NCBI GenBank assembly: GCA_950097015.1
Contig: CATNEN010000015.1
Coordinates: 1,612,001-1,676,000, forward strand
Source of the DNA: Macrostomum hystrix
Lineage: Eukaryota; Animalia; Platyhelminthes
DNA: 64,000 nt
Direction of reading: 5' to 3'
Made by a program: the position numbers and the translations under genes. Shown piece after piece: positions 55,171 through 64,000 of the stretch; the first letter of the stretch is position 1; every line of letters starts with the position of its first letter. The notes below the pieces were generated by a model. The model saw only the letters and a list, made by a program, of their open reading frames with translations. It searched no databases and was not told the origin of the DNA.

Positions 55171-56166
55171 TGCCTTTCGCGATAGAACGGCAGCGCGCTG
55201 TCTCGGCAGCATCCTGGATCGGCTGCGTAGCTTTATCAGCACGCTGCCAACGTTGTCGGCTGCTGCCGATCACTGAAATCGAGGTTTCCAGGCCGCCATC
55301 GGCGTCAATATTGCACCTGCCTGCCGTTTTTGTTTCGAGAGTGAGGAGAAAGCCTCTCACCTGTTTATTAACTACCCGGCCCTGTCTCTTCACCACTGCT
55401 GCTTCCAGGTACTCACAGTGACCTCGCACGGAGCCCGCGGCTGTGTTTTCTGAGCATTTCGTTGTGCTGAGTTTCCTCAAAGAAGTGAGCGTCCTCTAGC
55501 GTGACAGCCTCAGCAGATCTCGGATATCTCCTGCTTTTTCCTGTGGCAAACAGAGCGGTTGGGCGCTGGCCAGACATCCGTACTGAGCAGAGAAAGCTTG
55601 GGCGAAGCGAGGCAGCTCGCTCAGCTGCGCAGCGGGCTGTCTCCCCTCCTAGCCGGCTGCATGGCCCGCACACACACACACGCACACACACACAAACATT
55701 TTCAAAGTCCTTCAGGAAGAGCACAATGTCTTTAAATGCTTCTAGTTCTATAAATAGAACCATAGGCCTACGCGTTCTTATATTTCAAAACAAAATTGCT
55801 TCACTTTAACTTAGTCTTTCGTCGCTTCTTTCACTGAGAATTGCCCGAGTTGGAGCACAATTAATTTCTGGAATTCAGGAGCCAAAAAGAAAGCAAGCTA
55901 AAGCCATTTTACTTTGTGATTATTGATTGATTTTATACCTCTTTTTAGAAGCAAGAGGCAGGAAAATGTTTTGAGTCAGTTTTTCTGTAGAGTCAGAGAA
56001 ACGGGCAAAATGTGGAAAGTGGTGTTTTTTTTGCTGAGAAACTTGCCTGCGAAAGAATTTTATTTTCGACGAGTCGCATTTATTTCAATTTGTTTTTAAA
56101 GCAGTGAAAAGCTTCAGAGCTGGGAATCAAAATAGAAAGAAAGCACTGCAGAGGTGATTTAAGAAA

Positions 56167-57909
56167 ATGAATTTCCAGCAGCTTGTTTTTCGGTTGCTTC
56201 TTTTGCTTCCGTTGTTACACGACGATGTTGCTTCTGGCACCCGGATCTGCAAATCTTTGCTTATATTCGGCGACGGCTATGAGACCCACAGAAATGTTAG
56301 TCGCTTGCAGGCGGAGTTGACGGCTTATGTCGCTGGCTGCCAGCATGTTTTCGGCGACGTGACATTGAGCTATATAGGTACAAACCAATCAACGAACGAA
56401 CCGCTGGACGATGAAATTCGAGGCATGCAAACAGACTTTCTTGACTCCATTGTGGAGATCAGAGGAAAAATATGGATCGAGTACGTCAACCTTGAGCGCG
56501 TCACCTTCCGCAACTTGCGCACCATTCGAAGTCACGCTTTTGAAAAGTTTAAATGGTACACATTTGGAATATTCGAATCGCCGAAAATTAGTAAGCTGGA
56601 ATTGCCCAAGTTGACTGCTATCACATGGAGAAATGTTGGTCTAGTTGGTGTGAAAATGCAGTATAGCTTGTACTGCTACCTGTCCTACAGTATCAACTGG
56701 ACAAGCCTGTTTCAAGAACCAAACCAGCACTTTTTTGATAGAGTGTTTTCTGTTACTACTGAAGAAGGCCAAGTTCTTCAGAGAAGCTTGAACTCGGGTG
56801 TGATTGATAGGCATACCTGCAGTCGTCAGATTTCCTGTCACGCTAATTGTACTCAAACTCCTATTTATGGCCAAAAATGCTGGTCCGACGATGTTGATGG
56901 CTGCCAAAGTAATCATCTGTGTCGTAAGAGCAAGTGTAACTCTAAGAACCTATGCTTCCATAACCCGAGCACTGGCCAAGAAGACTGCTGCCACGACGAC
57001 TGCCTTGGCGGTTGTTCAAACCGGCTCAACGAGTGCTTCGCCTGTCGGAGTGGAGTATTGTTCAATGGTGTCTGTAGAGAATCCTGTCCGTCGAATACTA
57101 GTACCGCTAGTGGAAATGGCACTGGCGTGACTGTTTGGCGACAGATCGGCAACATCTGCGTAGAGAAGTGCTCACTGCCCTTTGTTGTTAGCTCTGACGG
57201 CAGGCGCTGTTTAATCGAGTGTCCGTCAGCAGAAGTCCCTATCAAAGGAGTTTGCACAAAGTGTATTGACAAAATTAGCTCTAGGCCCTGCAAATCGTGC
57301 AATGTCTCCGATTTAATGTCAGATAATTTAGCATACTTATTGAGGACTGAGCAGTGTTCGATTTGGAGGGCCCATTCTACTCTCTACTTTACTCTACGCG
57401 TGTATGCTGGTCAATTAAATAGCTTAGATAGCCTTAGAGCATTTGAGAATTTAGAGTACTTTTACGGCAATTTATTAATTTTGACATCTAAATACCTACC
57501 AGACTACTTCCGATCACTACGTAATATCAAACACGTCACAAAAACCCTTATTATTTCCTCGCTTAAGACGAGATACCTCGGACTAGCTAGCTTGGAATAT
57601 ACTCGTGACCTTCAGCTTAGGAATATTAGTGGTCTTTGCAGAGCCTGGTATCCAAGCAATCGAATCCGAGAAATCCAGGAAGTCACTAAAGAATTTCAAA
57701 TTACAATACTAAACCTGAGCTTTGATGACAGCAGCGAGATTTGCCGGAACGCTACCTGCGATGCTCAGTGCCAGGACGAATGCTGGGGACCCGGCCCAGA
57801 CATGTGCGTGGCGTGTCGGAACTTCAAAGTGAACGGCCGCTGCTATGCCACCTGTGCGGAGTCTGGCAGGATTGAAGTAAATGGGAATTGTGAACTGCGC
57901 CACAGCTAA
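56167..57909 (+). CDS. Intronless secreted EGFR-ectodomain-like protein (signal peptide, L1, furin-like CR1, L2, partial CR2), 580 aa, no TM or kinase
   Basis: Hydrophobic N-terminus MNFQQLVFRLLLLLPLL; L-domain motifs (IVEIRGKIWI, FRNLRTIR, LPKLTAI, FENLEYFYGNLLI); CCHDDCLGGC and CWGPGPDMCVAC furin-like repeats; many N-glycosylation sequons. L-CR-L-CR order is EGFR-type, not insulin-receptor-type. Confidence 0.85.
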   Translation: MNFQQLVFRLLLLLPLLHDDVASGTRICKSLLIFGDGYETHRNVSRLQAELTAYVAGCQHVFGDVTLSYIGTNQSTNEPLDDEIRGMQTDFLDSIVEIRGKIWIEYVNLERVTFRNLRTIRSHAFEKFKWYTFGIFESPKISKLELPKLTAITWRNVGLVGVKMQYSLYCYLSYSINWTSLFQEPNQHFFDRVFSVTTEEGQVLQRSLNSGVIDRHTCSRQISCHANCTQTPIYGQKCWSDDVDGCQSNHLCRKSKCNSKNLCFHNPSTGQEDCCHDDCLGGCSNRLNECFACRSGVLFNGVCRESCPSNTSTASGNGTGVTVWRQIGNICVEKCSLPFVVSSDGRRCLIECPSAEVPIKGVCTKCIDKISSRPCKSCNVSDLMSDNLAYLLRTEQCSIWRAHSTLYFTLRVYAGQLNSLDSLRAFENLEYFYGNLLILTSKYLPDYFRSLRNIKHVTKTLIISSLKTRYLGLASLEYTRDLQLRNISGLCRAWYPSNRIREIQEVTKEFQITILNLSFDDSSEICRNATCDAQCQDECWGPGPDMCVACRNFKVNGRCYATCAESGRIEVNGNCELRHS

Positions 57910-58302
57910 TCAGCTAATGTGATGAAGGCTGCGATGAACGGTCCAGGGCGTGATCAGTGTGTGAACTGAGAAGTTTCGTTAAGAACAAATCAGTGCTTCA
58001 TTGTAATGAGACTAAATTTGAGTTAATCAAAGTGTACCAAGATCCATATGATGCTTCTAAGATGAAATTTTGGAACAAGTTGTTTGTCTTCAATTAGTCG
58101 GTTAGCACATGCAGTGGCACACCATCAAGGCAAGCCATTGTGGCCATATTTGGTCCCCTGAGTTTGATTTCGCCTTTTATTGAAGCCAGTTAGGAAAATA
58201 CCTTCAGCACTTGAGTGCTCATTGTTTTTTCTATACCTAAATAAAATAGCAAATTGACTTGTACTTTAAAATCAAATACTACTACTTACAGTAGTATTTG
58301 TC

Positions 58303-58345: not shown

Positions 58346-58894
58346 GAAATAAAAATGGCCTTCATTTGACTGCCATCAATTCGCTAAAAACAGTCTTAAA
58401 CAGCATCTTAATAAGAAATTACACTTTTTCATACCTATCAATCAAGCGGCTTAACTTTACACATATCTTTCTGGATTGTGTAGAAATGGATGAATTAAAG
58501 GGCTAAATTGTACAGTTCTCGCGAAGCGGGGGCAGAATAGCTAGTCTATTATACTAAAAATGAAAAGTGTCCATATAAAGATATATATTTCAATTAACTC
58601 AATGCAAAAAGTACTAATGTCGTTTTTCTAGCGAACGTGTTGTCCGATTTTTGAGATTTTTTCACTAAAAGATTTGCCTACCTAACGAGGTGGTACACGT
58701 TTATTATCTAAGCATTTGCTTTATTCTTGTGGCAATAAATATTCTAAAAAGCAGTTTTTTCTGCTATACTTTTAAGGTCTTTTTTTCTTTCGAATAGGGG
58801 CTGACACTGTCAGTTTTATTTGATTGGGCTCGATAATGCCAATTGAATTGGATTGCGGCACCTGTTTTTGTGAAGAAAAAAATTATCTAGGGTG

Positions 58895-61615
58895 CAGCAT
58901 GAATTAATGACGAAAAAGCATGATATTTCGAGGGAAAAGCATGAATTTTCTAGGGGGAAGCATGAATTATCAAGGTGGAAGCCTGAATAATCAAGGGAAA
59001 ACCATGAACTGTCGATCGGAAAGCAAGAATTATCGATGGGAAGCAGGAATTATCGGAAGGAAAAGCGTGAAATATCGAGGGGAAGAATAAGCTATCAAAA
59101 GAAAGCGCGACAAATTGAAGGGGAAGCATGAATTCACGAGAGAAAAGCATGAACTATCGAGGGATAGCATCAAAAATCGTAGAGGGAGTATGACATATCG
59201 ATGGGAATGTTAAAATACATGTAATTGTTAGCTTTATCTATAGGCTAGTTGTTCTAATTATAACCAAGTGGTTTTCCTTCTAGAACAATGATTCAGAGAT
59301 TTCCCAATCAGTTACAGTATACCTCTGTTGTCTATGACATAAACTGCCTATATTTTGTTGTCCAAGCTATGTTAACACTATCGCTCCTTATACCCCCTTT
59401 TTAAATACACTGCTAACACTGGAGAATCACAGTAGATTATAACAGGGAAACATGACATATTTAGGGAGTAGAATGAATAATCGAGGAAGGAGCATGAATT
59501 ATTGACGGAAGATTAAATTTACGAGGGGAAGAATAAATTTTCGAGGGAATGCATGTATTATCGATATGATATATGATATATCGAGGGGATAGCATAAATT
59601 ATGCAGGGGGAGCAAGAATTATAAAGGAGAAAGCCTGAACTATTTAGGGGAATGCATCGATTATCGATGAAAAGCATAAATATTGAGCGAAGCATCAATT
59701 CTAAAAAGAAAATCGCGTGAAATATTGAGGGGAAGAATAATTTATCGAGGGAAAGCATGAATTATCGAGGGGGAAGCATTAAATATCAACGAGGTAGCAC
59801 GAATTATTGAAGAAAAACATCAATTATCGAGGGGGTACTGTAGTGTCAGCTTGTTTGTACTTCTATCTCCCCGTGTTATTTTTCAGTGCTTAATTATCTA
59901 TTTTTAGACGCGTGTGTTTTTTGCTAAGAGTCACCCACGCCAAGCCGGGCCGGACCAGCTGGGGGAACGGACGCCCACCACCCCGCGAGCGCTACCCCTG
60001 GGCTACGGTCCCGGCCAATCAGCGAGCGACCTGGCCTCACTACCTGTCTACCCTCGGCAAGAAGCGACCCCGGGGCTCAGAACGGCGGTCGCAAGTCTAC
60101 TGTGATTTGTCACCTTGGCTCAAGCTACAGCCAGGCATCCACCTCGCCGATCGACCTAGTTTGGGGTTGAAATGACTCTATATAACGAAGCGTGTTTTTG
60201 TAGTCCAAAATTATCTTTTTCTGCAATCCGCCTCACACTGTGAGAAGCACGTGCAAATTATCGCTATCGGCAATTCGCCTCACACTGTGAGAAGCACGCG
60301 CCAGCAAATTAAGTCCACTTGTTTTGTCCCTCCCCGCCCGACCACGCTCCGCTTGTTCAGTTAGGTAGCTTTCGGCGCTACGCGTCTTGAGAGTGCGCCG
60401 CTGACAAGGGTGGTCTAGATAGGCGCTGGTTGTCGAAGTCAGTACGTGCTCTCTTCGGAGACTCCGCCGTCCGGCAGAAGGAGTGCCAACCGATAGGATT
60501 TGTCGGGGCAGCGCTGAAAGCAGAGACAACCGGAGCCTCTCGGGAAGAGTAGGGCGCGGATTAGGCCAGTTAGGTAAAATTGTTATATCCAAATTGTTAG
60601 GCCAGACTTGCTTCTTACTGTGAGCGCTCTATGATTTATTTCCGTGCGAACATCTATCTGTCAGTATAACTTTTAAGTCAAGTAAACTATATTCAAAGTA
60701 ATTCCTATTCGTATCTGGAATCTTAGTCACAGCTGATCCAATCACTTCTAATCAAATTATTCGAGTCTTGTGTTCACACTGTGTTATTCCTTTTTCATTG
60801 GGAGTTTCGCCGGGCCGGAGGACGACATTTCCTATTCCGCTTCGCTTGCTACCCTAGTACTCTAACGCTATTTAATTTCAGATTCCCTGCTGCTATTGAA
60901 ACGATTGGTAGGACACCGACCCCGGTGAATAGTGAATAGTCGCTAGCTTTAAAATTCCTCTCGCTCCAGCTAGGACATTCATTTTATTACAGTACCATGA
61001 ATTGTCGATAAAAAGGCATGATACATCTATGGGATGAATTTTTACAAATGTAAGCGTAAAATATCGAGAAGAAGCATGAGGTGAGGTGAGGTGAAGCATG
61101 AATTTTCAGAGGAAAAGCTGGGTTTTTTAAGGGAAGTCATGCATTTTCGAAAGGAAAGCATGAATTATCAATGGGAGAGCTAGTGTAGTGAAATAAAAAT
61201 TATCGAGTCAGAATCATAAATTCTTGAGAAGAAAGCATGAGTTATTATAAGGGGAAAAGATGACATTTTGATGAAAAAGCATGAATTTTGTCGTGTGAGT
61301 ATCATTATTTATCGAAATGTTTTAGAATGTATTATCGAAAGTGTCGCAATTATTTATCAAGGGGTAGCATGGTATTTTTAAAGCGGAAGCATGTTATTAC
61401 ATGGGTTTAGCATGATAAATTAAGGACGTAGTATAAATTATTTACGGGCAGCATAAGTTATCGAGGAAACAGCAAGTATAAGTGAGGGAGCTTCACCAAA
61501 TGTTGAGAGTGGCACGATTTACTGTGGGGTTAGCATAAATTATCGAGGGGTAGCAAGCTTTGTCGAGAGGTTAGCATACTTTGTCGAGAGGTTAGCATGA
61601 TATATCAAAGAGGTA
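58895..61615. repeat. Old degenerate ~20-bp satellite (GCATGAATTATCGAGGGGAA) in blocks ~58895-59210, ~59440-59835, ~60995-61615
   Basis: Recurring AGCATGAATT and ATCGAGG cores with high divergence, interrupted by unrelated inserts. Confidence 0.75.
59838..60992. mobile_element. 1155-bp non-coding insertion into the degenerate satellite, TA on both sides, short inverted ends CTGTA...TACAG
   Basis: Left junction GGGGG-TA|CTGTAG; right junction TTACAG|TA-CCATGAATT. Removing the insert restores a satellite-like unit. Confidence 0.5.
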
Positions 61616-61616
61616 G

Positions 61617-63690
61617 TGTGACGTTGTCACTTACTGCAAGAGCCCCAATGAAAAAATGGTCGGGAGGACGGCGTGGACAGCGAAGCACCCGACGTCGCAC
61701 CGAGCGGCGAAGGGAACGCAACCGGCGAGGGCGAATGAAAGGCCGCCTCCGCCAGTCTGCTGGCAACACTGATCTGCCGACCCCCGCCCAGTCGGCTCCG
61801 CCGGGTGGCGCCGGGGACCGTGAGGCCCACCAACATCGGGCCCCAGCCTTTACAAACCGCGCTCTAAGGCTAGCAACCTTTAACTGCCGAACGCTAAAGT
61901 CTGCCTGGAGAAGGGGCATGCTCGCAAAGCTGGCATCTGACCTGCGGCTGGACCTCGTCATGCTGCAGGAGGTGTCAATCACTGCTGAGTCTGGCCTACA
62001 CCGTGAGGATCTGGGGAGCGGCTGGACGCTGCACTACACATCAGCGGACAGCAGAGGCCGTGGAGGAGTCGGCGTGCTTGTCGGACCACGGCTACGCGAG
62101 AGCATCTGCTGCGTCAGCCTGTCAGCCCGACTGCTGCGCGTGGACGTGAGACTACGTCGCCGCAATGTGCGGCTTTTCTGTGCGTACGCTCCCACAGCTG
62201 CCCATCAGCAGGAGGCGCAGGAATTCTTCGAGTTCCTGTCAGAGCAGCTCGAGATGGTGGCGCATCGCGACGCTGTGGTGATGCTTGGTGATCTCAACGC
62301 CGTAGCGCCGCGGTCCCAGCGCTGCCCGTTTGTGTCGCCACGCCAGAACGCCAACACCGCCGCGCTTGCGGACCTGATGGCGAGGCTCGACCTGGTGTCA
62401 GCCAACACGCGCTTCCGCAAACCGCCCAACCGGCTGGCGACCTTCGCCGGCTGCAAGCGAAGGAGGCGGAACGCGCGAGGCCGATTCGCTACGACCCGCT
62501 TGGCGCAGCTCGACCACGTGCTGATTCGCCATCGCGAACGCAGCCGGCTGCAGAACTGCGACACAATGGAACCCCTGGCTGTCCGGTCCGACCATCGCCT
62601 GCTCTACTGCGACCTGAGGCTCTCTGATCCGCTGTACCGACCACCAAAACGCCCTAGAAGAAGGTACTTCCGCGCCTTGCAAGACCCAGGCACCCGCAGC
62701 AGGTTTGCGTACGCCTTCGCGACCGCCCTGGGATCAGCGCAGGCGCCGGACTACAACACAATTAGCTCAGCCATCGCCACTGCCGCTGCCAAGACTCTGC
62801 CGCTTATGGAACCCGCGTCACGGCAACTTCCAGTTTGGGCGAGCGACCCGGAGGTACGTGAGGCCCGCCGCACTGTCGAGCAGCTGCGGCGAGCCAGGCG
62901 ACCGACATCCGATGCCGAGAAAGCCCTGGCAGACGCCTACGCAAGTCGACAGAAAGCCGCTGTTGACGACGCGATCCGGGCTGTTACCTCTGTCGGGCCT
63001 GAACGGCAGAACAGGGTCGTCTGGCCCGTTGTGAACGCCCTCACCGGTCGCAAAACGAAAGCGGCGCTCAACCTGGCTGGCGATACTGCCGAGGAGCGCA
63101 GAAACGAGCTGCGCACCTTCTTCGCCGCCATTGTCAACGCGCCGCCGCCGACTCTGCCGAACGAGATGCCGCTGCCCCCCGAGGTGGCGCTACCGCGGCA
63201 GGAGGACTTCGACACCAGTCCAGTGACCAGCACCGACATCGTGGAATTCGCCCGCAGGGCACCGGGAGGCCGCGCCCCCGGTCCGGATGAGGTCCCCGTA
63301 GAGGCACTGCGAGTCACAAGGGTTGCCACCGAGGTGGCCCGCGTGATGAACGGCGTCCTGGCGGGAGGCCCTGCGCCCCGCGAGTGGACCCAGGCCACCA
63401 TCGTCGGCATCCCGAAGAAGCCGGGCACTACAAAGAAGGAGGAGCATCGCGGGATCTCGCTCATGTCCTGTGCCGCGAAGCTGTTCAACCGGGTGCTGTT
63501 AGCACGGTTACAGCCTGTGCTGGACTCGTTTCTGCGGTACGAGCAGAATGGGTTCCGGCCCCGTCGCGGCACGGTGACTCAGATCCTGGCCCTCCGTCGC
63601 ATCATCGAGGAGGCGCGCATCCACCAGTCAAGCCTTGTCGTCATCTTTGTTGACTTTCTCAAAGCTTTCGACTCGGTGGCCCGAGTCACC
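61617..63690 (+). mobile_element. RTE-clade LINE, 5' portion: Arg-rich leader, AP endonuclease, RT N-terminal part; 3'-truncated
   Basis: LRLATFNCRTL...LQEV...GGVGVLV...AYAPT...VMLGDLNA...LDHVL...SDHRLL (APE); APGPDEVP...IPKK...HRGISLMSCAAKLFNR...EQNGFRPRR...FVDFLKAFDSV (RT). The frame is intact up to an abrupt end. Confidence 0.92.
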
Positions 63691-64000
63691 GAATAATTCT
63701 CGGTGGCCCGAGAGCTATTGATTAGCTACAGTCAATGCAATTTTTTTAGCATTATTACTCTTCTCGCTCTGAGAATTTTTTTTTGCAGCAGCAAGTTGTA
63801 TTCGATACAAAACTGAGGAAATAATTTCGAGCATATCTGTCAGCGTTTTAGATTCTGAAATATTATAAGATTCTTTAAGCAAAGCTGTTAGTTTTTTTTT
63901 TAGTTGTAACGTTTTTTAAGCATTCTTGCAAGCAATACGAGTATTCAATAGGATTGAAGAATAAATGAATAATGTCGCATATATGTTGCTTTGAGCAATT

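What the first reader, a model, noticed from the sequence alone, without database searches (positions are those of the whole stretch)
56167..57970. Secreted EGFR-ectodomain protein truncated exactly at a disulfide-module boundary, with a fossil continuation after the stop
Seen: a 580-codon open, intronless ORF ends ...CYATCAESGRIEVNGNCELRHS*. Past the stop lies an 8-bp duplication (CAGCTAAT x2, 57903-57918), then CDEGC and, in a shifted frame, GPGRDQCVN*, the decayed next furin-like module. Established: in EGFR domain IV the equivalent Cys pairs are 482-491, 486-499, 502-511 and 515-531, and the next Cys (534, in CIQCHP) pairs downstream. Here that Cys is Arg (CELRHS), so all retained domain IV cysteines are paired. 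Inference: several lesions after the stop and none before it, plus loss of the orphan Cys, point to selection for a soluble ligand trap or decoy (compare Drosophila SDR, nematode irld/hpa genes), derived from a full-length receptor, possibly by retroposition.
Basis: partly seen in the sequence, partly recalled or inferred. Interest (0 to 1): 0.75.

Follow-up and report, generated by a model that had tools for sequence, protein, structure and literature searches.

The report
Secreted EGF-receptor ectodomain gene family
This flatworm gene encodes only the outer, ligand-binding part of an EGF receptor; old mutations cut it short and left traces after the stop, and it is one of about twenty copies that stay intact and differ mainly on their binding faces, so it is probably one of a family of soluble binding proteins that I found described nowhere.

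Summary
Window 56167-57909 (+) is an intact, intronless 580-codon ORF: signal peptide, L1, furin-like CR1, L2 and the first two disulfide modules of EGFR domain IV. The DNA after the stop is a decayed copy of the next domain IV module.

It is not a lone gene. The genome (a Macrostomum flatworm) holds about 20 copies of a 2.4-kb unit, and 17 of the 18 full-length copies are intact. All share the same truncation and the same post-stop lesions. Intronless full-length kin with a kinase also exist here and in M. lignano.

Within the family all 38 cysteines are kept. Framework sites give pN/pS of about 0.25. Variable sites lie almost only in L1 and L2 and give about 1.0 (L1) to 2.4 (L2). L1 and L2 segments are exchanged between copies.

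Spread by retroposition is not supported.

No family member appears in public protein sets or in the papers searched, and the one word look-up in the scan's earlier notes found none. Expression, secretion and ligand are untested.

Verdict: a real, selected, lineage-specific family of secreted EGFR ectodomains, a new variant of the receptor-decoy theme.

The parts
55800..56166 (+). Conserved upstream part of the duplicated unit (putative promoter and 5' UTR). The TATA-like box lies at 56093-56101; this copy reads TTTTTAAAG where paralogs read TATTTAAAG.
   Evidence: Mean pairwise nt identity among 18 copies rises from about 0.5 to 0.77-0.88 here; alignment.
56167..56238 (+). Start codon and signal peptide (residues 1-24).
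   Evidence: Hydrophobic core LVFRLLLLLPLL; 97% nt identity among copies; helix 3-22 in the model. No signal-peptide predictor was available.
56239..56811 (+). L1 domain (residues 25-215), with 35 of the 62 hypervariable positions.
   Evidence: Pfam PF01030, E 1.1e-14. Region pN/pS 0.90. Variable sites alternate along beta strands.
56812..57306 (+). CR1, the furin-like Cys-rich domain (residues 216-380), nearly invariant in the family. Includes the arm-like loop 308-330 with two N-glycosylation sequons.
   Evidence: Pfam PF00757. From about 56830 on, 91-98% nt identity (96-98% over 56947-57306); region pN/pS 0.42. Sequons.
57307..57741 (+). L2 domain (residues 381-525), with 26 of the 62 hypervariable positions. 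This copy has a private 4-residue insertion (FTLR).
   Evidence: HMMER alignment to Drosophila EGFR covers residues 406-565. The model shows a beta-helix. Region pN/pS 1.03, local windows up to 2.5. L2 segment exchange between copies.
57742..57891 (+). First two disulfide modules of domain IV (residues 526-575).
   Evidence: Pfam PF14843 covers profile positions 1-38 of 132 only. 98-99% nt identity in the family.
57892..57909 (+). Short C-terminal tail ELRHS and the TAA stop. The tail is private to this copy because of a 4-nt deletion at 57898/57899; paralogs read ELPVPQLIG.
57903..57918 (+). 8-bp tandem repeat CAGCTAAT x2. It is an 8-nt insertion relative to full-length kin and is shared by the whole family as CAGCTAAT CGGCTAAT.
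57918..57969 (+). Fossil of the next domain IV module (CDEGC ... GPGRDQCVN, then TGA where kin have Cys). In this copy a private 4-nt insertion at about 57933-57936 splits it between two frames.
   Evidence: In a paralogue (L009) without this copy's indels, 58% nt identity to kin over the first 48 nt.
57970..58011 (+). Weaker continuation of the fossil. A Cys codon sits at the spacing expected from kin (x8 after the TGA).
   Evidence: Only 31% nt identity, so this part is tentative.
58012..58300 (+). Rest of the conserved 3' region of the unit (putative 3' UTR), with AATAAA at 58240-58245.
   Evidence: Identity falls from 0.90 to about 0.55; alignment.

Best explanation
The ORF is a working gene. 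It is one member of a lineage-specific family of about 20 genes in a Macrostomum flatworm. Each encodes a secreted EGF-receptor ectodomain with no membrane anchor and no kinase.

Origin: the family began when an intronless full-length EGFR-type receptor gene acquired a frameshift and stops right after the second module of domain IV. The truncated product ends on a closed disulfide, and the remains of the next module became 3' UTR. The 2.4-kb gene, promoter included, then multiplied by DNA duplication, and copies exchange segments.

Inferred mechanism: the protein is secreted and glycosylated. It lacks the distal domain IV that tethers vertebrate EGFRs, so it stays in the open form. It binds EGF-type ligands in solution through the L1 and L2 faces, as a ligand trap or buffer. 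Different paralogs would have different specificities or affinities.

Shown: the architecture, the truncation history, the family, and the pattern of constraint. Inferred: secretion, the open conformation in vivo, ligand binding, and the effect on signalling.
For: - Domain order and fold. The AlphaFold model has pLDDT 87 and pTM 0.83. Its best matches are the Drosophila EGFR and HER2 ectodomains. TM is about 0.6 against untethered or ligand-bound receptor ectodomains and about 0.36 against tethered forms.
- No TM or kinase homology anywhere in the 64-kb window or in the flanks of any copy.
- Family size: 18 full-length copies plus fragments; 20 loci hold the CR1 block. 17 of 18 are open.
- A neutral simulation gives P(no stop) of about 0.01-0.12 per copy.
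- All 38 Cys columns are kept in 17 of 17 copies.
- Sites invariant in one clade have pN/pS 0.25 in the other clade.
- The window copy has 3 private nonsynonymous and 7 private synonymous changes at framework sites.
- 61 of the 62 hypervariable columns lie in L1 or L2, alternating along beta strands.
- In an alignment with vertebrate EGFR-like proteins these columns fall on the equivalents of EGFR ligand-contact residues. The contact list is from my memory of the EGF-EGFR complex structures.
- Full-length intronless kin with a kinase exist here and in M. lignano.
- The post-stop DNA is homologous to the kin's next module.
Against: - No expression evidence.
- No signal-peptide predictor was run.
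- Whole-ORF dN/dS is 0.82.
- At the L1 variable sites pN/pS is 0.97 (CI 0.58-1.89). This fits relaxed constraint as well as positive selection.
- The L2 value of 2.4 may be inflated, because L2 segments are shared across the two clades used for cross-validation.
- A trap for conserved EGF ligands would be expected to keep its binding faces conserved.
- In this copy the TATA-like box differs from the family's.
- Synonymous divergence is very uneven (0.03-0.22), which points to gene conversion and blurs any rate test.
Confidence: 0.5

Rival explanations
1. Same secreted protein family, but not a trap for the animal's own EGF ligands. The EGFR ectodomain would be reused as a variable binding scaffold in an arms race. 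Examples are recognition of microbes or parasites, or seminal-fluid and partner-directed proteins in this hermaphrodite. L1 and L2 variants would be shuffled among paralogs to give many specificities.
For: - Variability is concentrated on the L1 and L2 faces on a fixed framework.
- pN/pS is 2.4 (CI 1.5-5.9) at L2 variable sites.
- Copies are mosaics. L010 and L011 are identical in L1 and 12% different in L2, and the nearest paralog differs between L1 and L2 for most copies.
- Signs of birth and death: one copy has a stop and about 4 are fragments.
- No family member appears in M. lignano's annotated proteins or any public set, as expected for a fast-turnover family.
- Reproduction-related genes evolve fast in this genus (PMC8662610; title and abstract only).
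Against: No target is known and no expression site is known. The L1 variable sites show pN/pS of about 1, not above 1. The positive-selection signal rests on pairwise counts, without a recombination-aware site model.
Confidence: 0.25
2. The family acts through its invariant Cys-rich domain rather than through ligand binding. The soluble ectodomain would dock onto full-length receptors via the domain II surface and block or modulate their dimerisation. The L1 and L2 faces would simply drift.
For: - CR1 is nearly invariant within the family (pN 0.005-0.05), although it differs from kin as much as L1 and L2 do (pN 0.38).
- The L1 variable sites look neutral.
Against: - The arm-like loop is shorter than in kin and carries two N-glycosylation sequons, which would hinder arm-mediated contacts.
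- Synonymous divergence in CR1 is also low. Much of the invariance may therefore be homogenisation by gene conversion rather than selection.
- The model has low confidence in that loop.
Confidence: 0.1
3. Dead relic: the ORF is an unexpressed pseudogene copy that has stayed open by chance or through recent duplication.
For: - The lesions after the stop show that the receptor gene was broken.
- Whole-ORF dN/dS is 0.82.
- This copy has private indels in the tail and an altered TATA-like box.
- There is no expression evidence.
Against: - 17 of 18 copies are open despite mean pairwise dS of 0.14; simulated survival is 0.01-0.12 per copy.
- All indels inside the ORFs are multiples of three.
- All 38 Cys are kept.
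- Framework pN/pS is 0.25.
- This copy's private framework changes are 3 nonsynonymous to 7 synonymous.
Confidence: 0.07
4. The ORF is only the first exon of a longer gene. Splicing, readthrough or frameshifting would bypass the stop and join a membrane anchor or kinase.
For: - In the paralogs the fossil module is in frame with the ORF, behind a single TAA.
- The 60 nt after the stop are 98% identical among copies.
Against: - No TM or kinase homology in the window (6 kb downstream) or near any copy; flanks beyond the 2.4-kb unit are unrelated.
- A second stop (TGA) follows 15 codons later in all copies. Frame-breaking indels occur in the fossil in two copies, this one and L015.
- GT..AG pairs near the stop that I checked by eye give no open continuation.
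- No RNA structure signal at the stop (z = +1.1).
Confidence: 0.03

Closest known systems
Soluble ErbB ectodomain isoforms of vertebrates (sEGFR, p85-sErbB3, herstatin) and the engineered high-affinity fragment sEGFR501 (from memory, not checked in a paper here)
   Same: Ectodomain only and secreted. Ends within or just before domain IV, so the tether is lost. Can bind ligand in solution and dampen signalling.
   Different: Those are alternative transcripts of the receptor gene, or laboratory constructs. Here the truncation is fixed in separate genes by a frameshift and stops, with the lost module still visible in the 3' UTR. The gene has also multiplied to about 20 variable copies.
C. elegans IRLD family, including hpa-1 and hpa-2 (PMC9262388, citing Dlakic 2002 and Iwasa 2010)
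   Same: An expanded, kinase-less family with receptor L domains. It varies between strains and species. Two members modify EGF signalling.
   Different: IRLDs have only weak homology to both insulin and EGF receptors. The flatworm family keeps the full L1-CR1-L2-start of domain IV order and nests inside a Macrostomum EGFR clade, so it arose independently.
Drosophila Sdr, secreted decoy of InR (PMC10140486, PMC7253209), and C. elegans DAF-2B (PMC7041946)
   Same: Receptor ectodomains without a kinase that sequester ligands. Sdr is a separate gene derived from a receptor.
   Different: They belong to the insulin-receptor branch, not EGFR. They are single genes or a splice isoform, with no hypervariable family.
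Full-length and membrane-anchored kin in the same genome (C9 and C41 receptors; C3 kinase-less forms)
   Same: Intronless, same ectodomain order, 35-47% identical in this genome, 47-51% to the M. lignano orthologue.
   Different: C9 and C41 kin keep the rest of domain IV, a TM helix and a tyrosine kinase. The C3 forms stop just after the TM helix. The family stops after domain IV module 2 and has no anchor.

Membership tests
EGFR/ErbB receptor tyrosine kinases | Ectodomain with L1, furin-like CR1, L2 and domain IV | tested here: met
   Pfam hits; HMMER hits to LET-23 and Drosophila EGFR; model matched to the Drosophila EGFR and HER2 ectodomains, Foldseek E about 1e-21. Domain IV is present only as its first two modules.
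EGFR/ErbB receptor tyrosine kinases | Single transmembrane helix | tested here: not met
   The ORF ends 5 residues after Cys575. There is no hydrophobic stretch after the signal peptide.
EGFR/ErbB receptor tyrosine kinases | Cytoplasmic tyrosine kinase domain | tested here: not met
   No PK_Tyr hit in the ORF. tblastn with the kin's C-terminal half finds nothing in the window or family flanks.
Secreted receptor decoys / soluble receptors | N-terminal signal peptide with no membrane anchor | tested here: inconclusive
   A typical hydrophobic N-terminus is conserved in all copies, and there is no TM and no long hydrophobic C-terminus. No signal-peptide or GPI predictor was available.
Secreted receptor decoys / soluble receptors | Binds the receptor's ligand and reduces signalling | not testable with these tools
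   Needs binding and signalling assays.
Processed retrogene (for the family's own spread) | Poly(A) tract at the 3' end and no parental promoter | tested here: not met
   The unit has about 370 nt of conserved upstream DNA with a TATA-like box and no poly(A) tract at its 3' edge. Intron loss predates the family, because the M. lignano orthologue of the full-length kin is one 3273-nt ORF.
Pseudogene | Neutral evolution and disabling lesions in the retained coding region | tested here: not met
   The lesions lie only after the stop. 17 of 18 ORFs are open, framework pN/pS is 0.25 and all Cys are kept.
C. elegans IRLD family | Common descent with the nematode irld genes | tested here: not met
   The family is monophyletic (SH-aLRT 100) inside a Macrostomum-only clade of intronless EGFR-type genes.

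The most novel reading that the evidence does not exclude
An EGF-receptor ectodomain has been turned into a repertoire of about 20 secreted binding proteins. Their two ligand-binding faces (L1 and L2) are diversified by positive selection and recombined between paralogs by gene conversion. This would make it an arms-race recognition family (immune or reproductive) built on a growth-factor-receptor scaffold. I found no such use of this scaffold in the papers and databases I searched, and I know of none.
Probability: 0.3. Interest if true: 0.8.

Novelty: new variant of a known kind. Interest (0 to 1): 0.62.

Why it matters
- Soluble receptor decoys are known, but mostly as splice isoforms or single genes.
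- Here the truncation can be read lesion by lesion, because the lost module survives in the 3' UTR.
- The truncated form was then kept and multiplied to about 20 copies that vary on the ligand-binding faces.
- The survey of flatworm EGFRs counted only sequences with a kinase domain (PMC4914847), so a family like this would have been missed.
- If the proteins are expressed, they are candidate extracellular modulators of EGFR signalling in a genus used to study regeneration and sexual conflict.
- Alternatively they are a new kind of variable binding scaffold.
- The family is also a clean case for studying how gene conversion and selection shape a young multigene family.

Tried and rejected
- Word-based protein search found only two distant vertebrate EGFRs, because the flatworm kin are too long for its length filter.
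Two runs failed on thread settings and one timed out. All selection estimates are therefore pairwise Nei-Gojobori counts.
- Exact-sequence look-ups of three family proteins, as a proxy for transcripts, found nothing.
- A PDB sequence search with L2 alone was too weak to give a residue-level map. I used the multiple alignment with vertebrate EGFR-like proteins instead.
- Splicing around the stop: I read the GT..AG options by eye. GAA|GTAAAT at 57877 joined to the AG at 57905 or 57913, and GTGAAC at 57890, all run into stops or give no meaningful continuation.
- RNA folding of the stop region showed no structure signal.
- An AU test could not decide whether the family arose before or after the split from M. 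lignano (p = 0.088).
- I considered a transposon-carried gene. I found no terminal repeats or transposon genes inside the unit, but I ran no dedicated repeat search on the unit's ends.
Full report
OBSERVATION

Window 56167-57909 (+) is an uninterrupted ORF of 580 codons that ends ...NGNCELRHS then TAA. Pfam finds a receptor L domain (residues 57-181), a furin-like Cys-rich region (226-369) and the first 38 of 132 positions of growth-factor-receptor domain IV (530-566). The best solved relatives are C. elegans LET-23 and Drosophila EGFR, E about 1e-15, aligned from L1 to domain IV.

CAGCTAAT occurs twice at 57903-57918. CDEGC is at 57918-57932 in another frame. GPGRDQCVN plus TGA is at 57940-57969 in the ORF's frame. 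The protein has 38 cysteines.

THE GENE IS ONE OF A FAMILY

A six-frame search of the window's own genome (220 Mb, 42 contigs) found 18 full-length intronless copies at 76-84% protein identity, each with an open frame of about 575-624 codons (ORFs from the ATG of 572-586 codons), plus several fragments. Most lie in clusters on contig C1; others are on C15 (the window's contig) and C39. A DNA search with the conserved CR1 block found 20 loci. Seventeen of the 18 are open from ATG to stop; one (L005) has an internal TAA.

The shared unit is about 2.4 kb, window 55800-58300. The sequences beyond it are unrelated. The unit includes about 370 nt upstream of the ATG with a conserved TATA-like box about 70 nt before the ATG. 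It also includes about 350 nt after the stop with an AATAAA. There is no poly(A) tract at its edge. The copies therefore spread as whole genes at the DNA level, not as retrocopies.

FULL-LENGTH KIN AND THE ORGANISM

The same search found more distant intronless genes.
- Contigs C9 and C41 hold ORFs of 1050-1112 codons with the same ectodomain, the rest of domain IV, a hydrophobic helix and a tyrosine kinase domain.
- Contig C3 holds three ORFs of about 700-750 codons that stop just after the helix.

An exhaustive search of 1.8 billion representative proteins gave only two strong hits, both full-length receptor tyrosine kinases of Macrostomum lignano. They are 72% identical to the C9 and C41 genes respectively. 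This confirms the genus suggested by earlier notes of the scan. The M. lignano gene is also a single 3273-nt ORF, so intron loss predates the truncated family. An intron-containing EGFR-like gene also exists here, seen as exon-wise hits at C39:4.45 Mb.

No protein close to the truncated family is present in the public sets searched. The published survey of flatworm EGFRs counted only sequences with a kinase domain (PMC4914847). One word look-up in the scan's earlier notes (several terms, all required together) found nothing on this family.

THE TRUNCATION, READ AGAINST THE KIN

The seventeen paralogs end ...NGNCELPVPQLIG then TAA. CDEGCNGPGRDQCVN plus TGA follows in the same frame. Full-length kin read C-LP-C-HSE-C-DGG-C-SGPSASE-C-ER-C at that place.

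At the DNA level the family differs from kin in four ways:
- One extra nucleotide lies just before the codon of the next cysteine. That TGC is still there, but is now read out of frame as part of Val-Pro-Gln.
- Eight extra nucleotides form the second CGGCTAAT. The net +9 puts the following module back in frame.
- A TAA stop has appeared.
- A TGA sits where kin have the Cys after C-x-x.

The 99 nt after the paralogs' stop match the kin's equivalent 99 nt at 44 positions. That is more than any of 11,995 other windows of the kin locus. The first 48 nt are 58% identical. Beyond that only a Cys codon at the expected spacing remains. The truncation happened once, before the expansion.

The window copy adds private changes. 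A 4-nt deletion creates the RHS-stop ending and the 'Arg in place of Cys'. A 4-nt insertion splits the fossil between two frames. A G-to-A change makes the 8-bp repeat perfect.

The retained protein ends after the disulfide that corresponds to the fourth pair of domain IV, so no cysteine is left unpaired. The pairing scheme is taken from the known EGFR structures, not tested here.

IS THE TRUNCATED FORM MAINTAINED?

Mean pairwise dS among the 17 ORFs is 0.14. A simulation of neutral substitutions on one ORF gives a chance of 0.01-0.12 of staying free of stops at per-lineage divergences of 0.03-0.07. Yet 17 of 18 copies are open, and all length differences inside the ORFs are whole codons. All 38 cysteine columns are kept in all 17.

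Whole-ORF dN/dS is 0.82, but it is very uneven:
- signal peptide 0.6
- L1 0.90
- CR1 0.42
- L2 1.03, with local windows above 2
- domain IV modules 0.42

To avoid circularity I defined site classes in one clade (10 copies) and measured substitutions in the other (5 copies). Columns invariant in the first clade have pN/pS 0.25 in the second. The 62 columns with four or more residues in the first clade have 1.49 in the second (bootstrap CI 1.01-2.44). Split by domain, the figure is 0.97 (0.58-1.89) for L1 and 2.42 (1.49-5.86) for L2.

The window copy itself has 3 private nonsynonymous and 7 private synonymous changes at otherwise invariant positions, like its intact relatives. The family, this copy included, is under purifying selection on its framework. 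Positive selection on the binding faces is suggested, mainly for L2, but is not established.

WHERE THE VARIATION LIES

Of the 62 hypervariable columns, 35 lie in L1, 26 in L2, one in CR1 and none in domain IV. An AlphaFold model built on 56 aligned sequences is confident (pLDDT 87, pTM 0.83). It matches the ectodomains of Drosophila EGFR and HER2 with TM about 0.6. It matches tethered EGFR, HER3 and HER4 forms only at about 0.36. That fits a protein lacking the distal domain IV that forms the tether.

On the model's secondary structure the variable positions alternate (i, i+2) along successive strands of each L domain. This is the pattern expected for one exposed sheet of a beta-helix. In the alignment with two vertebrate EGFR-like proteins they fall on the equivalents of human EGFR Tyr45, Leu69, Glu90, the Asp355/Phe357 stretch, Leu382, Gln384, His409, Phe412 and Ile438. 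I recall these as the EGF-contact residues. That list is from memory and is a lead, not a test, because I could not obtain the model's coordinates.

CR1 is nearly invariant in the family although it differs from kin as much as L1 and L2 do. This includes an arm-like loop with two glycosylation sequons.

MOSAIC COPIES

Neighbouring copies L010 and L011 are identical in L1, differ by 0.2% in CR1 and by 12% in L2. For most copies the nearest relative differs between L1 and L2. Segments are therefore exchanged between paralogs. This explains the uneven synonymous divergence (0.03-0.22). It probably also explains the 98% identity of the domain IV modules together with the first 60 nt after the stop. 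It also weakens the independence of my two clades for L2. No RNA structure signal was found around the stop.

AGE

Synonymous sites between family and kin are saturated (pS 0.7-0.96), and the family sits on a long stem (0.6 changes per site). In the tree it lies outside the clade that joins the M. lignano gene with the C9 and C3 genes (SH-aLRT 98). An AU test does not reject placing it inside this species' own genes (p = 0.088). Whether M. lignano once had the family is open.

RIVAL READINGS

- A longer spliced or read-through product is unlikely. No TM or kinase homology exists in the window or near any copy. A second stop follows 15 codons later. Two copies have frame-breaking indels in the fossil.
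- A dead relic is unlikely for the reasons given under maintenance.
- What the proteins bind is unknown: the animal's own EGF-type ligands, the full-length receptors, or foreign or partner molecules.
- I commit to soluble ligand binding through L1 and L2, with paralog-specific specificity, as the most likely mechanism. The arms-race version is the main rival.

COMPARISON WITH KNOWN SYSTEMS

- It works like the soluble ErbB isoforms of vertebrates. It also works like Drosophila Sdr and C. elegans DAF-2B, which sequester insulin-like ligands (PMC10140486, PMC7253209, PMC7041946).
- As an expanded kinase-less L-domain family it resembles the C. elegans irld genes, two of which modify EGF signalling (PMC9262388).
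- It is not an EGFR in the receptor sense, because it has no TM and no kinase. It is not related by descent to irld.
- New here are the fixed genomic truncation with its visible relic, the expansion to about 20 copies, and the variable, exchanged L1 and L2 segments.

LIMITS

- There are no expression data.
- No signal-peptide predictor was run.
- No site-model test was possible.
- No 3D mapping was possible.

Noticed in passing
G000:C3:4446720-4452348, 4784916-4790559, 4807943-4813613 (L024, L022, L023): Three intronless paralogs of the C9 receptors keep the ectodomain and transmembrane helix but stop a few residues after it. Homology to the kinase-bearing kin ends abruptly at a Lys-Tyr junction. 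They also carry a 52-residue N-terminal extension. This is a second, independent loss of the kinase in the same clade, giving membrane-anchored decoy-like forms.
   Followed up: partly
Protein P0093 (M. lignano PAA84175.1, 549 aa): An M. lignano copy of the full-length receptor type ends in a frameshifted reading of the first domain IV module, a few residues after L2. It could be an independent truncated ectodomain or an assembly or annotation error.
   Followed up: partly
Window 57907-57966 and the same stretch in L002-L018: The first 60 nt after the stop are 98% identical among 18 copies, as conserved as the coding domain IV modules and far more than the rest of the 3' region. Gene conversion is the likely cause. 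No RNA structure signal was found.
   Followed up: partly
G000:C1:27351562-27353286 (+) and 27361102-27362826 (-) (L002, L003); C1:26505334 and 26515315 (L010, L011): L002 and L003 are a near-identical inverted pair about 10 kb apart. L010 and L011 are a tandem pair about 10 kb apart that is identical in L1 and CR1 but 12% different in L2. These are recent duplications followed by segment exchange.
   Followed up: partly
G000:C24:5871399-5873529 (L026): Another EGFR-ectodomain paralog (39% identical) has a 512-codon ORF ending inside L2, and a further matching piece lies about 400 nt downstream. This could be an intron or a disruption.
   Followed up: no
Window 61597-63696 (+): A 699-codon ORF with endonuclease (Exo_endo_phos) and reverse transcriptase domains, i.e. 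a LINE element 3.7 kb downstream of the gene.
   Followed up: partly
Window 58881-59834: Arrays of degenerate 20-21-bp tandem repeats (about 14 and 18 copies) lie just downstream of the duplicated unit.
   Followed up: no
Upstream regions of L004, L008, L013 and L015: In some copies the DNA upstream of the unit repeats part of the unit's own 5' region (the GATTATTGATTGA stretch). This suggests a tandem duplication within the promoter region.
   Followed up: no
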